From Ascidiella aspersa (taxonomy: Eukaryota): a DNA stretch of 64,000 bases. A program made the position numbers and the translations under genes. The notes under the pieces were generated by a model. That model was given only the letters and a program-made list of their open reading frames with translations, ran no database searches and was not told the DNA's origin. Shown piece after piece: positions 8,534-64,000 of the stretch (its first letter is position 1; every line of letters begins with the position of its first letter). Location of the stretch: the NCBI GenBank assembly GCA_963924565.1, contig OZ004610.1:8246001-8310000 (forward strand). The letters are read 5' to 3'.

Positions 8534-9066
8534 CTGACTCAGGTGTGCATAAAACCTAAATAGCACACCTAAACATCGGGCGATAGACACCCAAGATATC
8601 GGCATGAAGTGCCATGAAATTGAAATGCAGACTGATCTGTATGGGAATCTTGGCAAGTGCGACACCGAAGTATTTTCAACAGACCAAATTCATACCCCAT
8701 ACTATTAAACATATACCCCGATTTTCCTATACTTAACACTAGCAAAGTGCATTTTTCATCTTTACTACACTAAGTTTATGCTTTTTCGGCTCTGATCTAG
8801 AATCCTACCGCAGTTATTAAATCAATGCGTAATAGGAGTGATAGTTAGCGTTTGAGTGTGGTTGGAATAAAATTGCATAACCCACCCCAACTCAAGTAAT
8901 GTGCGGTGTGGTAGGATTCTAAACCAGCACCGATTTTTCCGCCATGCTCTCAGTTAACTCTCATCAAGATCTGTCATACTTTCCAGACTGGATTGTAGCT
9001 AGTCTGCATTCTGAAACATTTTCCACTCAAGATTTTCAAAATGATTTATGTGCACACCTTAGTTGG
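8534..9066. mobile_element. Tc1/mariner-like MITE (TA TSD) containing a nested fold-back element
   Basis: ta|CTGACTCAGGTGTGCA ... TGCACACCTTAGTTGG|ta. The ends are inverted copies; two differences are explicable by CpG decay of CCGACT/AGTCGG. Confidence 0.5.
8788..8931. mobile_element. Fold-back MITE family A, copy 1 (TIR GGYGCTGGTCTAGAATCCTACC); a solo TIR fragment also lies at 8481-8498
   Basis: GGCTCTGATCTAGAATCCTACC ... GGTAGGATTCTAAACCAGCACC; flanks gctttttc / gatttttc (7/8); same family as copies at 49215 and 49478. Confidence 0.75.
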
Positions 9067-9686
9067 TAAGCTCAAGTTTTGCATTAAGCATAAATTATTT
9101 GTTGGTTTAGTGTCCTGATTTCAAGGATCCCAAAACCAAACAGTGTCATCATTTGCCATGAAATATCACCTGCCTTGTGAATTAGCAAGCATTAATTGGC
9201 ATTTTACATATATATTGCCACATTTGAACAGGATTTTTATTTTGGTTGAATCTTTGGCTGCAACAAATTAGGGAATGCAGTCAGGGTCGAAAAAAAAATC
9301 TGTGGGTCACACAAAAACATTGAAATAAGGTTGGGTTGAAATTAAAACACTTGGAAAGCCCTGATCTTTCAAGCCCATCGGGAAAGTATGGTAGACCTTG
9401 ACGAGATCTCACAGGTGACCAGGTGCAAATAAGGTCAAAAGTGCACCCCGCCAATATAACATATTAGAAAACCAGGTGAATATTCATTTTCTAGGGGTGC
9501 AGGTCTAGTCTCTTATAAAAAAATTGTGGGTGAACTTGCCCCACTTTCCATAGTGACTTTCAGGGAAGAAATTATTAAAATATTACAATTTAGCCTTTTT
9601 CTATTACAAGGATTCCACTAATAATGTTTAGTACCAGGCATTGAAAGTGTATTTTTTGTCAATAATTTAGTAATTAAGTCTTGATC

Positions 9687-56333: not shown

Positions 56334-57134
56334 GTGGAACACAAAACCTTACATGGGACGTTGTAGCCTAACTAAACAGACTTTTCACATACTACAACAC
56401 AAACGTTCAACGGGCCAAAAAGTAATACCACAAATCACCGTTAGTGTTGTCCGAAACTACATTTGTCCCGCTAAAGCAGGCATGCAAGCAAAGCGAAGTC
56501 GAATCAGCAGCAGCAAAACGACGAACCTATGTTTGAACCGTTCAGCCCTGTTTCACCTAACGTTAACAAGCCATGCACATGCTGTTCCCGTGTCAATCGT
56601 TTGTATGGTGCTGAACGTACTGGCGGTCTGTTGTAAAATAGGATGAACACAAATTGTATAACAGAGAGTTAGCGTGGCGAACAACGCGCTTGCAAAGAGT
56701 TCTAAAATGAACCGTTACTAGATAAATTTTGCTGTTACAACATGCATTTACGAGGTATCAGTAAAGTGATAAGAGCTAGGTAAGGAAAGTACTGTTTCGC
56801 TATAAACATAAGTAATGATGTTATGTATCGCGAAAAGTCTTAAGTAACGTAAGCGGTTATTAAACTGGCACTTTATTCGTCATGTGGAACGCATATATTT
56901 GTAATATATGTGTTTCTGAAAACAATGATTGTTTAGTACAGTAGCATCTGTTTTGCCGAACAACTTGCAGCCAAATCTTGCAGTGACAAGATATCGGCAA
57001 ACTAAATGCAGTTGAAAACTGTTTCAAATAATAATTGTTTATATATTCAAGTGCTGCACTTGCTTTCGGCAACCAAGCGAGTTATTTTGCCCCATTTGTT
57101 AGCAATACCTTGCGCACAGCGCCGGGCGCGAAAG

Positions 57135-60100
57135 CTACTTTGCCGTCTTTGGAAGCACTGAGATGTGGAACTGTTGATTCGGTTTGCTCGATATCGACGA
57201 TCTGTGGTGGTAATACCGAGACCCTCCTTCTTTCTTTCGCTCGTATTCGACAACCACGCGCTGGTCCAAAGCCCGTTGCGGCATCGCGTAGAGAACGGGG
57301 TGGTCAAGCGTCGTGACGCCATTTCGTGACGTCATCGATTTTGATGACGTCAAAACGTTGCTTGACGAATCGGATAAAAGATGCTTCGGTTTCGGAGGAA
57401 CTGCTGGTTTTGGTTTGTTTTTAAGTGACGCTGCTTGGTTGGCTGCCGAATTTGAGTTTTGTATTGATGACGTCACTGATTTTTTGCGCTGTGATGACGT
57501 CACTATTGATTTCTGTATTGACGTAGCCTGGGTTTTGTTTGCAGATGAAGTCGTGTTGTTGGAATACGCCACATTTCCGTTTGCTGAAGCCGACCATTTT
57601 CTTGTAGGTATTAAATCCTGCGTGAAATTGTGATTTATTGACGTCACCGAACCTTTACGCAATGATGACGTTGCACCTGCGGAGTTGACAGACGCCCCGG
57701 GAGCTTTGCGATTTGACGCTGTCACCAAAGGATTATTTGATGCTTGCACGTTTGAACTTTTTGAAAAGGAATTTCGGTCAGTCCTGCTGTGAGATGTTGC
57801 GCTGTTTGTTGGAGAAATACAAACTTTGGTCGTGTCTGACCTGTGGTCATGTTGTAATATCGACACATTAATATCAGTTTTATTCTGTGTCGTGATAGAT
57901 TTTCGACGTTCCGATGTTGAGTTTGTCGACTCTTTCAAAGTCTGATTGGGTGGCGCGATGATCGAATTTTTTGTTAAAAATTGCGGCACAGCAGGACTGT
58001 TGTGGCTTGCCGAGAAACCTGCCTTTTTAGCTGCAATTGGTACAGGCCGAACTTTGCTGGTTTTTGAAATGTTAAAGGTTGGTGATGATGGACTTGTACT
58101 TTGGTGTTCCAATTTGTTGCTTTGAGGTGGATCAATATTTTGGGAAGACGGATTTTGGTTTGGCATTGGCGAATTTTCATTTTGCATTGACGGACTTACA
58201 ATTTGTGTTGACGTCGGTATTTTGGTGTTTTGGGACGTAGCAGAATTGAGTAACGATAGGTTTTGAACTGGAAAAAATGTTTTTTCATTTTGCAGAGTTT
58301 GATTATAACTTTGTGAAGATATACTTGAGTTATTCAATGGCGTATTTTGATTATCTGAAGAACGATTTTGATTTATCACTGAGGATTTTCCATTTTGGAA
58401 TGGTGCATCAGGATTTTGCGAGAACTTATTGAAATCACGATACGATTTACTGTTGTCGTCGCCCGAGGTGGTCGCAGAACTATCATTTCCATGAGATAAA
58501 GGACCCTTTCCAGTGGCATTATTAGTGCCATCTGTCACTGCGGTCTGTTTTATGCGATAGGATGACAGCGTTCGGTTTCTTTTGCTGAAGTTTCGTTTGG
58601 GTGGAACGGGCCGGCTTGCTCGCATGGCTCGTTCCTGGGAAACAAGAGGAGCCATGCTCTCAATGGCTGCTTCCGTGTCTTTGCCTTTGAAATGGTTGCT
58701 GTGCTCATCATCCATATGCTTAGCAGCCTTGACGGAGTCTTTAATGGTTGTATTCTCTTTCACTCCAGCAGTGTCGTTGGATGTATCTGCGCGTTCAAGA
58801 GTATTGATGTGTTGTTTTTGTACCCTAATCCTGTCTTTTACATCGTATATGGAGTTTCTTGGTTGGTTTTGTATAGGAAAGCTGTCTTTCACATCGTGTA
58901 GTGAATTTCTTGGTTGGTTTTGTATATCAAAGCTGCTTTTCTCATCGTATAGTGAATTTCCATGTTGGTCTGGTATATTGGTACTGTCTTTCTCATCGTA
59001 TAGTGAATTTCTTGGTTGGTTTTGTATATCAAAGCTGCCTTTCCCATCGTATAGTGAATTTTTATGTTGGTCTGGTATATTGGTACTGTCTTTCTCATCG
59101 TATAGTGAATTGCTTGGTTGGTTTTGTATATTAAAGCTGTTTTTCACGTCGTATAGTGAATTTCCAAGTTGGTTCTGTATATTGTTACTGTCTTTGACAT
59201 CGTTTAGTAAATTTATTGATTGGTTTTGTATATTACTGTCGTTCACATCGTATACGGAGTTTCTTGTTTGGTCTGGTGTATTGGTACTGTCTTTCACATC
59301 GTTTAGTGAATTTATTGATTGGTTTTGTAGATTAAAGCTGTCTTTCCCATCGTATAGTGAATTTCTTGATTGGTTTTGTATATCGGAACTGTCTTTCCCA
59401 TCGTATAGTGAATTTCTTGATTGGTTTTGTATATCGGATCTGTCTTTCGCGTCGTATACGGAGTTTCTTGTTTGGTTTTGTATACCGGAACTGTCTTTCC
59501 CATCGTGTAGTGAATTTCTTGATTGGTTTTGTATATTACTGTCGTTCATATCGTATACGGAGTTTCTTGTTTGGTCTGGTATATTGGTACTGTCTTTCAC
59601 ATCGTTTAGTGAATTTATTGATTGGTTTTGTAGATTAAAGCTGTCTTTCCCATCGTATAGTGAATTTCTTGATTGGTTTTGTATATCGGAACTGTGTTTC
59701 CCATCGTATAGTGAATTTCTTGTTTGGTTTTGTATATCGGAACTGTCTTTCGCGTCGTATACGGAGTTTCTTGTTTGGATTTGTATATCGGAACTGTCTT
59801 GCTCATCGTATAGTGAATTTCTTGATTGGTTTTGTATATTACTGTCGTTCATATCGTATACGGAGTTTCTTGTTTGGATTTGTATATCGGAACTGTCTTT
59901 CCCATCGTATAGTGAATTTCTTGATTGGTTTTGTATATCGGAACTGTCTTTCCCATCGTATAGTGAATTTCTTGATTGGTTTTGTATATCGGATCTGTCT
60001 TTCGCGTCGTATACGGAGTTTCTTGTTTGGTTTTGTATACCGGAACTGTCTTTCCCATCGTGTAGTGAATTTCTTGATTGGTTTTGTATATTACTGTCGT

Positions 60101-63100
60101 TCATATCGTATACGGAGTTTCTTGTTTGGTCTGGTATATTGGTACTGTCTTTCACATCGTTTAGTGAATTTATTGATTGGTTTTGTAGATTAAAGCTGTC
60201 TTTCCCATCGTATAGTGAATTTCTTGATTGGTTTTGTATATCGGAACTGTGTTTCCCATCGTATAGTGAATTTCTTGTTTGGTTTTGTATATCGGAACTG
60301 TCTTTCGCGTCGTATACGGAGTTTCTTGTTTGGTTTTGTATACCGGAACTGTCTTTCCCATCGTGTAGTGAATTTCTTGATTGGTTTTGTATATTACTGT
60401 CGTTCATATCGTATACGGAGTTTCTTGTTTGGTCTGGTATATTGGTACTGTCTTTCACATCGTTTAGTGAATTTATTGATTGGTTTTGTAGATTAAAGCT
60501 GTCTTTCCCATCGTATAGTGAATTTCTTGATTGGTTTTGTATATCCGAACTGTGTTTCCCATCGTATAGTGAATTTCTTGTTTGGTTTTGTATATCGGAA
60601 CTGTCTTTCGCGTCGTATACGGAGTTTCTTGTTTGGATTTGTATATCGGAACTGTCTTGCTCATCGTATAGTGAATTTCCTGATTGGTTTTGTATATTAA
60701 AGATATCTTTCCCATCGTGTAGTGAATTGCTTGGTTGGTTTTGTATATCAAAGCTGTCTTTCACATCGTATAGTGAATTTCCAAGCTGGTTCTGTATATT
60801 AGTACTGTCTTTCACATCGTTTAGTGGGTTTCTCGATTGGTTTTGTATATCAGAACTGTCTTTCACATCGTCTTTGTTATTACCAACATTCCACATTTTG
60901 GGCGAACTTGTAGTCGTTGAATTCGCATATGTTTCAGCAGTAATTTGACTGGAAGTAGTAAAGTTTTCCCCTTGGTTTTGTGTTGGCGCAGAAACGTTGT
61001 TAAAAGTTGCATTGCCCACTTCGTTGTCAAGGTTTGATGTGAAGTTGTTAGCTTGGTCAAAAATGGCTTTGTTTTGTGTAGATGCAGAGTTGTTTTTAAA
61101 AGTTTTATTGACTAATTTATTATTTTGGCTTGATGTGATGTTGTAGCTTGAAATGATAAAGTTTTGATTCTGCACCTGTGGTGAATGGACATTCCCTGCT
61201 GTGCCACTTGCATTGATATGACCGATATCTTGCGCAAATCCACTTTTAAGCCCTGCTGATTTTTGTTCAGCAAAATTCGCATCCACGCTTCGTGTTAAAG
61301 TTGCGCCATTTCCCGCGGTTGACATTGCGCTGTTCGCAAGTATGCTTGCCGTGGTTTGCGATATCGGCAATTTTCCTTCTCTGTGTAACGCATTTGATGC
61401 ACGACGATTGGAGACAAAAGATAGATGCGATACGCTGCCCGGACCGAAACTATGTGCAGATTGGCCATTAAAGGCAAGTGCTGTTGCTGTGTCACCAGCT
61501 TTGGACACATTGCCATAACTTAAGCTCTCAGTGCCATGGTTTAAGACGCCAGGACCCACCAGAGATGAATGAAGCTTCTCGCTGCGATGTTTACCCGCAG
61601 CAACTTTGACAACCGGCAAGCTCGTGCGTCTATAGTCGGCACTTTTATTCTCGGCAGGTTCTCCACGTGACGATAAACCAGAACCGTTTAGCAGAATTCT
61701 CTTGGATGTGGCCGCTTTTCCGTCGTATCCGTCGTCAAGAATAATTGTAGCCTTTCCGGGCGTTTTGGATGCATTGGCTGCCGCGCTGACAAAGAGTGGT
61801 GCTTGTTGCGATGCCAACGGCCTTACGCTGTTTGTGACTGTTTCTGTGTGTTCCATATCGATTATGTCGAGAAGATTGCCATTCGCTGTTGATTAAAAAG
61901 TAAAAGGGATGCAAGCTTTCAAGAATCGCATCACAATTTTTAGTTGGTTTAAGTGGTGATCTTTTTAGCATAAAATAATCGCTTCAATCAATATTTTTTC
62001 GATAATCATGGTTAATTTTAAACAAAAACTAAATAAAAAATCATAATTGGCAAGTCCAGTCAATCATAAATCCACACCACATAATTTTTGTTAAAATAAA
62101 CTATTCAGAAATCAAATATAAGAAACTCTGAGTTTATTAGTTACTAAGAATTTGGCAATTTCTAATAAACAAAGAAATCATTTATCAGGAATTTAAAATC
62201 AAAGATCACTGGAGTCCAATCAATGACTACAGGATTAAAACAATACTTTTTTGCAAAAAGATTACAATCAGCGTGTTTGAACACAAGGGCTGCCGGCGCA
62301 AGCAATGGAAGCGCAAGCACTTGCTGAGTGGTCAGCTTATTTTGACGCACTACTAACCTGCAAATTCCGAACCTCATTGCTATTCTATTTCGCTTTTGGG
62401 CACCGGATCCTTTCTAAGTTAAACAAATAACAATTTTTTAGTCTTTTTAACGTTAGATAATTGGATTAGAGCAACGCCCATGTAGCGCCGGCAGCCCCAA
62501 TTGTTCTCATTACCGGTTTCTTATTTTAAAACGCTTTCCTACCTCCTCCCAAATCCACCCGCGACCTCTCGATTTCTACGGGCAAGGAGTAACCTTTGGA
62601 GCTGCGGGAACGCAAATAAGCCCTTCTCCGCCTTAAAAAGTGCAAATCGTGTCATTGCATATACAAGTTTCAGTTCAAAATGTAGATAGCCATTCGTTTA
62701 AAAAGTGTTTTTTGCCAAGATTCGAACTTGCGCCCGTGGGAATACGCGACCGCTGTGTTACCGACTAAGTTATCAAGCTTGCGCTTTGAGATCCAGAAAT
62801 GAATCATATCTACCTTCACGTCTGTTGTTTCATAAAACGAATAACTTTATGTTTTATTCACGCTGCGCTTGTTATATTACTCGTCTATCCAACGTTAGTG
62901 AATGGTGTTTAAATAAATTTATTTCGTGTCCACTTCTCTACGAATGTATAGAATAGTTTCATTTACTGCCTTGTATATGAAATTTGTTTTGACTGTATAA
63001 AAAACCAAAAAAAAAGTATGACTGGCAATACTTCGCTACTGTTCAAACCAGTGATTCTTCCTGTAAGCATAAACTTTGAGGATTTTACAGTGGTAATTAT

Positions 63101-63432
63101 GAAAATGCCTAGGAAACTTTTGCTAACACTATTCTTTCAATTGTCCAAAATTGTATTATTTAAATAAATGTAAATTTGTTTGTCATTTTAGTGTTGTTTA
63201 GTCATAAACTGTCTGCATGTCATTTAATTATACTCCTTGCAAATCTTTTCAATAAAAAGAACCACTGGTCAAGACTTTTTTGACCGTGTTTCATCTATGA
63301 ATCGTCAGACAAAATCTAGCTTATAGCACACTTACCTGCAGCACATGTAAATGAGGATCGCGATCGCGATAATAAGCAGGATGAGCAGAATTACGAATCC
63401 AATCATGAACCCGCTGTTCGGTTCATCACAAC
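57135..63432 (-). CDS. Single-pass type I membrane protein, 3' portion (ectodomain outside window). Exons 63432-63336 (TM), 62631-62543, 61885-57135 (4.75-kb terminal exon)
   Basis: Exon 63432-63336 gives CDEPNSGFMIGFVILLILLIIAIAILIYMCCR (hydrophobic helix plus juxtamembrane CC). The next exon gives RRRAYLRSRSSKGYSLPVEIERSRVDLGG (stop-transfer). A phase-1 join (ANGNLLDIIDMEHTET...) leads into the 1573-aa ORF. All junctions are GT-AG. Confidence 0.82.
58830..60870 (-). repeat. Coding tandem repeat: 40 units of 51 bp (some 48 bp), consensus QNQSRNSLYDGKDSSDI, with 303-bp and 252-bp higher-order blocks
   Basis: Units counted in the translated ORF; offsets of repeated off-frame ORFs (59312, 59615, 60170, 60473) show 303- and 555-bp periodicity. 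Confidence 0.95.
62714..62782 (-). mobile_element. tRNA-derived SINE head or tRNA pseudogene
   Basis: Minus strand has A-box-like TAACTTAGTCGG and B-box-like AGTTCGAATC at tRNA spacing, but no convincing cloverleaf. Confidence 0.5.
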
Positions 63433-63584
63433 CTGTATTACACACATTTTGTTACACGTGTGCCTAATGTTAAGAGGTAAATTAAGTTATGCAATGGCTT
63501 TTGATTGACACTTTTTCACAACAACAAACCCATTTTTTGATATGACAATCAAAGCTAAACATTATACGACCGTGATATTAAACA

Positions 63585-64000
63585 CAAACCTTGCACTTTA
63601 AATAATCTTTGCTTCCAACTATTTGTCTAATTTGGAAGCCATACGCCAATTGGCGATTCGCAGACAACTTTTTATTTATGTATATAGTACATTACAGCGA
63701 AAGTAATATAACTCGTTTATTAGTGTAACTTTACACCTCACACTTTTCATTTTTAAATTTTGTCGTTTCATCGGGCATTAGTAGTTAGTTTTACAACTAT
63801 TTCATCTAAGTAATAACTGCTAATTCAAAGCTGAACGACCGTTATATTTAGCACATACCTTGCGCTTAAAATATAATGTTTGTTTGCAACTGTATTTGTC
63901 TAGTTTGGAAGCCATACGCCAATTGGCAATTTGCAGACAAACTTGTATCTATGTCTCATATATTACAGCGAAAGTAAAATAACTAATTATACACCTCACA
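63585..64000. repeat. ~270-bp tandem duplication (63585-63742 vs 63855-64000)
   Basis: Shared blocks TATTTGTCTA(A/G)TTTGGAAGCCATACGCCAATTGGC, GCAGACAA, ATTACAGCGAAAGTAA and TACACCTCACA. Confidence 0.85.

What the first reader, a model, noticed from the sequence alone, without database searches (positions are those of the whole stretch)
57135..63432. Membrane protein with a ~1,600-aa cytoplasmic tail carrying a 40-unit array with 29 tyrosine motifs
Seen: two small upstream exons missed by the ORF track supply a TM helix, a CC pair and an RRRR stop-transfer, which places the whole 1573-aa ORF in the cytoplasm. The tail has 40 repeats; 29 carry N-S-[LVI]-Y-D and 11 have H or N in place of Y. It also has Pro-rich motifs (RPVPPKR, KPKPAVPPKPK), YxxP sites (GYSLP, LYAMP) and an ITIM-like LSYGNV. 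Known: multivalent pTyr tails (nephrin-Nck, LAT, p130Cas substrate domain) cluster SH2/PTB adaptors; NxxY is a PTB-ligand core. Inference: a lineage-specific receptor or adhesion protein with an unusually high-valency phosphotyrosine platform tunable by repeat number. I recognise no catalytic domain in the tail.
Basis: partly seen in the sequence, partly recalled or inferred. Interest (0 to 1): 0.8.

Follow-up and report, generated by a model that had tools for sequence, protein, structure and literature searches.

The report
Sea-squirt membrane protein, long repeat tail
A single-copy sea-squirt gene probably encodes a surface protein whose roughly 1,600-residue floppy inner tail carries a young 40-copy repeat; the repeat is real, but nothing yet shows that its tyrosines form a signalling platform.

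Summary
There is a 1,573-codon minus-strand ORF and a 51-bp x 40 coding array. 29 units carry NS[LVI]YD and 11 have H or N at the Tyr position. Two small upstream exons (a TM helix ending in CC, then RRRR) fit the ORF in phase.

Beyond the window I chained 16 more phase-compatible exons, including a WSC domain. That gives a ~2,430-aa type I membrane protein with a ~1,610-aa cytoplasmic tail. A second DNA sample has far fewer differences in these exons than in the introns (P 0.008).

The join to the big exon is not proven. The one RNA run gave 13 scattered reads and no joints.

The tail has no relatives, no paralogue, no Pfam domain, and is predicted disordered.

The array is young: a 303-bp higher-order unit and only 24 distinct units. 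Variation between units is neutral-like (8 synonymous to 31 non-synonymous variant codons, against 30 to 113 possible). Tyr is less conserved than N1, D5 and Q15. The motifs do not fit NPxY, YDxV or YxxP, and the other short motifs occur at chance level.

Verdict: an orphan disordered tail with a coding minisatellite. The phosphotyrosine platform stays speculative.

The parts
63336..63432 (-). Exon 17 of my model (97 nt): the last ectodomain residues (CDEPNS) plus the transmembrane helix, ending in CC
   Evidence: Acceptor ...taatacag| and donor CAG|gtaagt. It starts with 2 nt that complete a codon from upstream exon 16 and has no stop. No DNA differences fall in it in run X1.
63344..63412 (-). 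Transmembrane helix GFMIGFVILLILLIIAIAILIYM
   Evidence: Kyte-Doolittle mean over 19 residues is 3.53. It is followed by CC and four Arg, which fits the positive-inside rule.
62543..62631 (-). Exon 18 (89 nt): juxtamembrane (R)RRRAYLRSRSSKGYSLPVEIERSRVDLGG
   Evidence: Acceptor ctttttaag| and donor GAG|gtaggaaa. The phase fits exon 17 and exon 19.
57135..61885 (-). Exon 19, the terminal exon (4751 nt including the TAG stop): 1582 residues of disordered tail
   Evidence: Acceptor tttttaatcaacag|. It is open from the acceptor to the stop. No Pfam domain, no relatives, no paralogue. AF2 mean pLDDT is 35-40 for both non-repeat flanks.
61854..61856 (-). First in-frame ATG of the big exon, 29 nt after the acceptor, with G at -3 and +4
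   Evidence: This is the basis of the rival in which the ORF is a separate cistron.
58806..60881 (-). Coding minisatellite: one degenerate unit plus 40 units of 17 (16) aa, consensus NSLYDGKDSSDIQNQSR. The higher-order unit is 6 units (303 bp).
   Evidence: Net charge is -35.
58593..58613 (-). RPVPPKR (fits PxxPx[KR])
   Evidence: two such motifs against 0.27 expected in shuffles, P 0.04.
57384..57416 (-). KPKPAVPPKPK (fits PxxPxK and KxxPxxP)
56872..56877 (-). AATAAA about 260 nt after the stop: the likely polyadenylation signal
   Evidence: Read from the sequence.
62133..62138 (-). AATAAA inside intron 18. Together with read-through of the exon 18 donor (stop after ...DLGGGRKAF) it could give a short-tail isoform.
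   Evidence: Read from the sequence. About 0.7 such hexamers are expected by chance in this AT-rich intron (my estimate). Three RNA reads lie at 62100-62500.

Best explanation
The 4.75-kb ORF is the last exon of a single-copy gene of about 19 exons and about 2,430 codons, in an ascidian-like genome. The gene encodes a type I membrane protein. Its parts, in order, are: a weak N-terminal signal-like start; Cys-rich PAN-like exons; one WSC (carbohydrate-binding type) domain; further unassigned ectodomain exons; a Pro-rich stalk; one TM helix; CC-RRRR; and a cytoplasmic tail of about 1,610 aa.

The tail is an orphan, intrinsically disordered sequence rich in N, S, Q, D and T. A slightly basic head (+6) and a basic C-terminal part (+34) flank an acidic array (-35). 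The array is a young coding minisatellite that grew by unequal crossing-over of a 6-unit (303-bp) block. Its amino-acid variation looks unconstrained.

Inferred mechanism: the ectodomain binds a glycan or matrix ligand. The tail acts as a long flexible multisite arm. Each unit carries a Ser two residues before the Tyr in an S-x-x-D context (a CK2-type site, 38 of 40 units), an acidic DSSD patch, one Tyr and usually one Arg. The array therefore offers generic multivalent, probably phospho-regulated, low-affinity contacts whose number drifts with repeat number. It does not look like a dedicated SH2/PTB docking platform.

Shown here: the anatomy, single-copy status, lack of relatives, predicted disorder, and the youth and neutral-like variation of the repeats. 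Inferred: the exon 18 to 19 junction, the topology, and all function.
For: All 18 junctions of the exon chain have AG/GT borders, fit in phase and contain no stops. The WSC HMM hits two adjacent exons: 31.8 bits (cut-off 27.8) and 18.7 bits covering the rest of the model. The genome scan also finds it at 29.6 bits, over the cut-off. TM hydropathy is 3.53, against 0.66 at most in the tail. Run X1 DNA shows 35 differences over 6 kb, of which only 2 fall in the 1,350 nt of predicted exons (binomial P 0.008), and none in exon 17, exon 18 or the first 386 nt of exon 19. The tail has no paralogue in the 308-Mb genome, and neither do three ectodomain exons. Relatives: two word searches found none. 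A phmmer search of 1.84 billion representatives gave only 4 weak hits. The three I read (P0001-P0003) are repeat-on-repeat hits to unrelated proteins. The fourth (P0004) matched the non-repeat C-tail in 13 low-identity stretches and was not read. Pfam gives only a spurious repeat-driven hit. AF2 mean pLDDT is 39.6 and 35.4 with almost no secondary structure. The tail has one Cys and two Trp in 1,573 aa. Repeats: 24 distinct DNA units; higher-order copies differ by about one base; synonymous to non-synonymous variant codons are 8:31 against 30:113 possible; N1, D5 and Q15 are invariant, while Y4 is Y29/N6/H5. No decayed units lie in the flanks. No AATAAA lies within 135 nt upstream of the acceptor at 61885. 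Ciona operons place the upstream polyA site directly at the trans-splice acceptor (PMC1488885), so a Ciona-style operon is a poor fit here.
Against: No RNA joint was seen. Only 13 reads of run X4 (about 6% of the run was read) lie on 6 kb. They are spread over introns and exons, with none on exons 17 or 18. All have the first mate on '-', which for the commonest stranded libraries would mean + strand RNA. The first ATG of the big exon sits 29 nt after the acceptor in a good context, as expected if the ORF starts a separate, possibly SL-trans-spliced, mRNA. The phase match between exons 18 and 19 has a one-in-three chance. The signal peptide at exon 1 (MRFLSFCKKLILLSTSL...) is atypical and was not tested with a predictor. 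The exon chain was built by eye, with some freedom in choosing sites. AF2 on a single sequence cannot tell an orphan fold from disorder.
Confidence: 0.45

Rival explanations
1. The big ORF is a separate cistron. The WSC/TM gene ends soon after exon 18, either by read-through to ...DLGGGRKAF-stop with polyadenylation in 'intron 18' or at an unseen terminal exon. The 1,573-aa protein starting at ATG 61856 is then a soluble, disordered cytosolic or nuclear protein. Its mRNA would come from its own promoter or from SL trans-splicing at the acceptor at 61885.
For: The ATG lies 29 nt after the acceptor, with G at -3 and +4. About half of Ciona genes are SL-trans-spliced, and about 20% lie in operons (PMC1488885; PMC2760879 abstract). 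An AATAAA sits at 62133-62138 in intron 18, and three RNA reads lie at 62100-62500. No RNA joint links 62543 to 61885.
Against: The phase fits and the frame is open from the acceptor. The ORF has no signal or other N-terminal feature of its own. Ciona operons lack intercistronic DNA and have the polyA signal just upstream of the acceptor. Here the nearest AATAAA is about 250 nt away, and one such hexamer is expected by chance. The intron size of 657 nt is typical for this gene.
Confidence: 0.22
2. The array is a selected, very high-valency phosphotyrosine platform with 29 NxxY/YD sites. After phosphorylation by a Src- or Syk-type kinase it clusters SH2 or PTB adaptors, and its valency can be tuned by repeat number.
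For: Each Tyr has a hydrophobic residue at -1 and Asp at +1 in a disordered acidic context, which many tyrosine kinases accept (my knowledge, not tested). Two PxxPx[KR] motifs stand against 0.27 expected, P 0.04. The subfamilies NSVYD (AAC TCC GTA TAC GAC) and NSLYD (AAT TCA CTA TAC GAT) differ by three synonymous changes in N, S and D, which hints at constraint on the pentapeptide. Multivalent pTyr tails do cluster adaptors; nephrin has three YDxV motifs (PMC4238058, PMC11247170).
Against: Tyr is the least conserved of the core positions: it is lost in 11 of 40 units and in 7 of 24 distinct units, and units without Tyr are propagated in every higher-order copy. Overall variation between units is neutral-like. 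There is no NPxY. Position -5 from Tyr is S, T, P, L or H and hydrophobic (Leu) in only 2 of 40 units. Position +3 is K, N or Q, so no unit fits the YDxV, YxxP, YxN or YxxM classes. The other cited motifs occur at chance level. No relatives exist to show conservation. Expression and topology are unproven.
Confidence: 0.12
3. Sticker-and-spacer condensate tail. Evenly spaced Tyr (29) and Arg (27 at unit position 17) in a polar N/Q/S/D spacer make the array a prion-like, self-associating segment. It would cluster the receptor under the membrane without needing phosphorylation.
For: Composition and regular 17-residue spacing, and predicted disorder of the flanking tail segments. The Tyr/Arg sticker logic of FUS-like domains is from my own knowledge.
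Against: The net charge of -35 and about 14% Asp oppose self-association. The array has no Gly-rich or aromatic-rich context. The reading is untested and unsupported by any comparison here.
Confidence: 0.07
4. The locus is silent or decaying. The open frame and the array would then be a recent accident with no function.
For: Almost no RNA in the one run available, and possibly from the wrong strand. Variation between repeat units is neutral-like.
Against: There are about 2,430 codons without a stop across 19 exons, and about 890 open non-repeat codons in the last exon alone. The predicted exons hold fewer DNA differences than the introns.
Confidence: 0.05

Closest known systems
Fungal Wsc1/Slg1-type cell-surface sensors (my knowledge)
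   Same: Signal sequence, WSC domain, an extended low-complexity region, one TM helix and a cytoplasmic tail. The WSC HMM match was tested here.
   Different: In the fungal proteins the Ser/Thr-rich segment lies outside the cell and the tail is short. Here the long low-complexity part lies after the TM helix, the ectodomain has extra PAN-like and unassigned exons, and no sequence relationship exists outside the WSC domain.
Kremen1/2, animal WSC-containing type I receptors (my knowledge)
   Same: An animal type I membrane protein with a single WSC domain in the ectodomain.
   Different: No kringle or CUB match turned up in any exon scanned, and Kremen tails are short.
Nephrin cytoplasmic tail (three YDxV motifs that bind Nck; PMC4238058, PMC11247170)
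   Same: A disordered tail of an adhesion-type receptor with Tyr-Asp motifs. This is the model for multivalent pTyr clustering.
   Different: Nephrin needs Val at +3. Here +3 is K (33 units), N (5) or Q (2). Here there are 29 sites from a young repeat, against 3 conserved sites in nephrin. Phosphorylation here is unknown.
p130Cas/BCAR1 substrate domain (15 YxxP) and LAT (my knowledge)
   Same: Many Tyr in a disordered segment that serves as an adaptor platform.
   Different: The array has no YxxP. Those proteins are conserved across animals, whereas this tail has no relatives.
Tandem Tyr-motif repeats of bacterial effectors (Chlamydia Tarp, Helicobacter CagA EPIYA segments; my knowledge)
   Same: Tyrosine motifs multiplied by tandem DNA repeats, with copy number varying between strains.
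   Different: Those are secreted bacterial proteins with proven phosphorylation. There is no sequence similarity, and this is an animal gene.
Coding minisatellites in disordered regions (for example mucin VNTRs and involucrin; my knowledge)
   Same: A period that is a multiple of 3, higher-order units, near-identical copies, relaxed amino-acid constraint and sharp array borders.
   Different: Here the array lies in a predicted cytoplasmic tail and not in a secreted or glycosylated domain.

Membership tests
WSC-domain proteins (Pfam PF01822) | HMM match over the curated cut-off | tested here: met
   Exon 3 (L002 8088-8215) scores 31.8 bits against a cut-off of 27.8 and covers model positions 1-50. 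Exon 4 (L002 7448-7577) scores 18.7 bits and covers positions 42-82. The genome scan finds it at 29.6 bits, over the cut-off.
WSC-domain proteins (Pfam PF01822) | Eight conserved cysteines | tested here: met
   There are 3 Cys in exon 3 and 5 in exon 4. That the family has eight Cys is my knowledge.
Type I single-pass membrane protein | One hydrophobic helix followed by a basic cluster on the C-terminal side | tested here: met
   Kyte-Doolittle 19-residue mean of 3.53, then CC-RRRR.
Type I single-pass membrane protein | Cleavable N-terminal signal peptide | tested here: inconclusive
   Exon 1 starts MRFLSFCKKLILLSTSLNS. The hydrophobic core is short and interrupted by KK. No signal-peptide predictor was available.
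Type I single-pass membrane protein | The TM exon and the tail exon lie on one mRNA | tested here: inconclusive
   The phase fits. No RNA joint was seen, with only 13 reads.
PTB-domain ligands (NPxY) | An Asn-Pro-x-Tyr core, with a hydrophobic residue at -5 for Shc/IRS-type PTB domains | tested here: not met
   There are 0 NPxY in the whole ORF. The units read N-S-[LVI]-Y. Position -5 is S, T, P, L or H, and hydrophobic (Leu) in only 2 of 40 units.
Nck-type SH2 ligands (nephrin YDxV) | pTyr-Asp-x-Val/Pro | tested here: not met
   Y-D is present, but +3 is K, N or Q in 40 of 40 units. The motif definition comes from PMC11247170.
Cas-type substrate domains (YxxP arrays) | Repeated YxxP | tested here: not met
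   The array has none. There is one YxxP in the big exon outside the array (LYAMP), against 0.70 expected, and one more in exon 18 (GYSLP).
ITIM-bearing receptors | [ILVS]xYxx[ILV] beyond chance, usually near the C-terminus | tested here: inconclusive
   There is one match (LSYGNV), against 0.56 expected, P 0.43.
SH3-ligand-bearing tails | PxxPx[KR] or [KR]xxPxxP | tested here: met
   2 PxxPx[KR] against 0.27 expected, P 0.04. 1 [KR]xxPxxP against 0.27 expected, P 0.24. This is a consensus match only.
Phosphotyrosine scaffolds in general | The tyrosines are phosphorylated in vivo and conserved in relatives | not testable with these tools
   No proteomics is available. No relatives were found.
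Coding minisatellite / VNTR | Tandem period divisible by 3, near-identical copies, higher-order structure | tested here: met
   51 bp x 40.3, a 303-bp higher-order period, and 24 distinct units.
Intrinsically disordered region | Low hydropathy, few order-promoting residues, no confident fold | tested here: met
   The order-promoting residue fraction is 0.19-0.22, with 1 Cys and 2 Trp. AF2 pLDDT is 39.6 and 35.4. These were single-sequence models, which is a caveat.

The most novel reading that the evidence does not exclude
The joined model is right and the array is a working docking device. It would be a receptor whose cytoplasmic tail offers about 30 phosphorylatable Tyr (and about 38 CK2-type Ser) in identical 17-residue units, giving the highest valency known for a membrane-anchored phospho-scaffold. 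Unequal crossing-over would change signalling or clustering strength between individuals.
Probability: 0.1. Interest if true: 0.7.

Novelty: new member of a known kind. Interest (0 to 1): 0.3.

Why it matters
If the tail is only a drifting low-complexity arm, this is one more fast-evolving orphan membrane protein of a tunicate, useful mainly for annotation: a 19-exon model that is absent from the protein databases searched. If the array proves to be phosphorylated and bound by adaptors, it would be a natural experiment in valency. It would be a receptor whose number of docking sites changes by repeat slippage, which bears on how multivalent tails drive membrane clustering. The WSC plus PAN-like ectodomain also hints at glycan sensing in an animal that builds a cellulose tunic.

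Tried and rejected
- RNA support: the one RNA run of the species (X4) gave 13 reads and no joints.
- Relatives of the tail: word searches with residues 1030-1573 and 1-340 found nothing. A phmmer search with residues 880-1573 gave four weak hits. The three I read are repeat-on-repeat artefacts, and the fourth was not read.
- Paralogues: none for the tail or for three ectodomain exons.
- Pfam on the tail: the UPF0147 and DUF668 hits have no stretch that passes on its own, so I rejected them as repeat-driven.
- Pfam on 20 exon-like pieces: only the WSC match. Two pieces of the neighbouring locus gave weak, sub-threshold Vps62 hits.
- Literature: two searches for ascidian WSC transmembrane proteins or repeat tails found nothing.
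I stopped that step and redid the exon table from coordinates alone.
- The ectodomain as a whole, and orthologues found through it, therefore remain unsearched.
- Extracellular mucin-like reading (62 N-x-S/T sequons): rejected. The composition alone predicts about 43 (my estimate), the segment follows the TM helix and RRRR, and the ORF has no signal sequence of its own.
- The 788-aa ORF on the + strand: rejected as a gene because it is confined to the array.
Full report
**Where it lies.** The window is G000:C4:8246001-8310000 of a 308.6-Mb, 75-contig animal assembly. Earlier notes of this scan call the animal a sea squirt. A GH6-type exon in the genome is in keeping with that label, because tunicate cellulose synthase carries such a domain (my knowledge). 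The finding lies at the right edge of the window on the minus strand, so I fetched the next 20 kb (L002 = window scale 64001-74000; L005 = 74001-84000).

**Observation.**
- The 1,573-aa ORF at 57135-61856(-) is real.
- Tandem Repeats Finder reports a 51-bp period with 40.3 copies at 58831-60871, and a 303-bp higher-order period.
- A PSSM built from the units finds one more degenerate unit at residues 326-342 and no decayed units elsewhere, so the array has sharp borders.
- The 788-aa ORF on the + strand is confined to the array plus short edges. It is the usual by-product of a stop-free repeat.

**Gene model.**
They encode CDEPNSGFMIGFVILLILLIIAIAILIYMCC and (R)RRRAYLRSRSSKGYSLPVEIERSRVDLGG.
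- Reading on upstream, I could chain 16 more exons in L002 (E1 8999-9160 down to E16 554-709). All 18 junctions in the chain have AG/GT borders and compatible phases.
- E3 and E4 together make one WSC domain. Pfam PF01822 scores 31.8 bits (above the 27.8 cut-off) and 18.7 bits on them, the two pieces cover model positions 1-50 and 42-82, and they hold eight Cys. The genome scan picks up the same place.
- E1-E2 and E6 are Cys-rich and look PAN-like, but have no Pfam hit. E16 is a Pro-rich stalk.
- The model is about 2,430 codons long: an ectodomain of about 785 aa, one TM helix (Kyte-Doolittle 3.53), CC-RRRR, and a tail of about 1,610 aa with no hydrophobic segment (maximum 0.66).
- An AATAAA lies about 260 nt after the stop.
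- Independent support comes from a DNA run of the species (X1). It differs from the assembly at 35 places in the 6 kb I laid, and only 2 of them fall in the 1,350 nt of predicted exons (P 0.008). None falls in exon 17, exon 18 or the start of exon 19.

**What is not shown.**
- The only RNA run of the species (X4, about 6% read) put 13 reads on the 6 kb. They are scattered over introns and exons, none lies on exons 17 or 18, and no joint was seen.
- All 13 have the first mate on '-'. By the tool's own hint this would mean + strand RNA in most stranded libraries. I could not calibrate the library.
- Expression and the 62543-61885 junction are therefore unproven.
- A real rival is that the big ORF is its own cistron. 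Its first ATG lies 29 nt after the acceptor in a good context, and about half of Ciona genes are SL-trans-spliced (PMC1488885).
- Against a Ciona-style operon: the polyA site of the upstream gene should abut the acceptor. Here no AATAAA lies within 135 nt, and the nearest is about 250 nt away.
- Read-through of the exon 18 donor would stop after five codons, so a short-tail isoform is also possible.

**The tail.**
- Pfam finds no domain.
- Two word searches and a full phmmer search of 1.84 billion representatives find no relatives. The three best of the four weak hits are unrelated proteins with repeats of their own. The fourth was not read.
- The genome has no paralogue of the tail or of three ectodomain exons.
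- The tail has 1 Cys, 2 Trp and about 20% order-promoting residues. Net charge is +6 for the head, -35 for the array and +34 for the C-terminal part.
- AF2 gives a mean pLDDT of 39.6 and 35.4 for the two non-repeat parts. The only repeated element of structure is a weak hairpin near the C-terminus. These are single-sequence models, so they are consistent with disorder but do not prove it.

**The repeats.**
- Only 24 distinct DNA units (23 distinct peptides) exist, and six-unit blocks recur almost base for base. The 29 tyrosines are therefore copies, not independent sites.
- Tyr is always coded TAC. It is replaced by single first-base changes (to CAC or AAC) in 11 of 40 units, and those units are carried in every higher-order copy.
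- The invariant positions are N1, D5 and Q15, not Y4.
- Single-step variant codons among the units are 8 synonymous to 31 non-synonymous, against 30 to 113 possible. This is what unconstrained mutation gives.
- One hint of constraint exists. The NSVYD and NSLYD subfamilies differ by synonymous changes in N, S and D.

**Motifs.**
- There is no NPxY.
- Position +3 after Tyr is K, N or Q in every unit, so the units fit neither nephrin-type YDxV (PMC11247170) nor YxxP.
- Outside the array, the YxxP, ITIM-like and NxxY motifs occur at chance frequency.
- PxxPx[KR] is mildly enriched: 2 observed against 0.27 expected, P 0.04.
- A CK2-type S-x-x-D site (S2) occurs in 38 of 40 units. Ser phosphorylation is therefore at least as plausible as Tyr phosphorylation. 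This is an inference from the consensus, not a test.

**Verdict.** The most likely reading is a lineage-specific WSC-domain type I membrane protein. Its long cytoplasmic tail would be an orphan disordered sequence containing a young, drifting coding minisatellite (confidence 0.45). A separate soluble protein is the main rival (0.22). The dedicated phosphotyrosine platform is possible but unsupported (0.12). This is a new member of a known kind, and I score its interest as modest.

Noticed in passing
L005 1902-2192 and 4919-5242 (minus strand; window scale about 75900-79250); also G000:C4:8353160-8353267(-): Exon-like ORFs upstream of this gene carry 'CPxGYKxLGD' motifs, with weak, sub-threshold Pfam Vps62 (PF06101) hits (E 0.034 and 0.24). 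Exon 10 of the present gene (L002 4304-4426, CPPNYRSLGD) looks alike but has no hit. A further WSC match lies 35 kb upstream. This may be a distant tandem paralogue.
   Followed up: partly
window 63530-64000 (intron 16 of the model), continuing into L002 1-90: There are two or three tandem copies of a roughly 230-bp element (each starts tgtgaggtgta... and includes ...gccaattggcgtatggcttccaaa...). It is probably a small dispersed or tandem repeat. One DNA contig of run X1 shows a 4.5-kb 'skip' joint with a 22-nt side that may stem from such repeats.
   Followed up: no
window 61794, 61822, 61825: All four RNA reads on the 5' end of the big exon differ from the assembly at these three places (G>A, C>T, A>G on the + strand), whereas DNA run X1 does not. 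By my codon arithmetic two of them are second-codon-position changes (V11A and R12K). They look like allelic differences between individuals.
   Followed up: partly
Its strong + strand A-over-T skew at 28-34 kb mirrors the minus-strand skew of the present tail. This region may be rich in big orphan exons.
   Followed up: no
G000, genome-wide: The WSC HMM finds only 11 exon-level matches in the 308-Mb genome, three of them clustered at C4:5.31-5.33 Mb. The family is therefore small here and this gene is not part of that cluster.
   Followed up: partly
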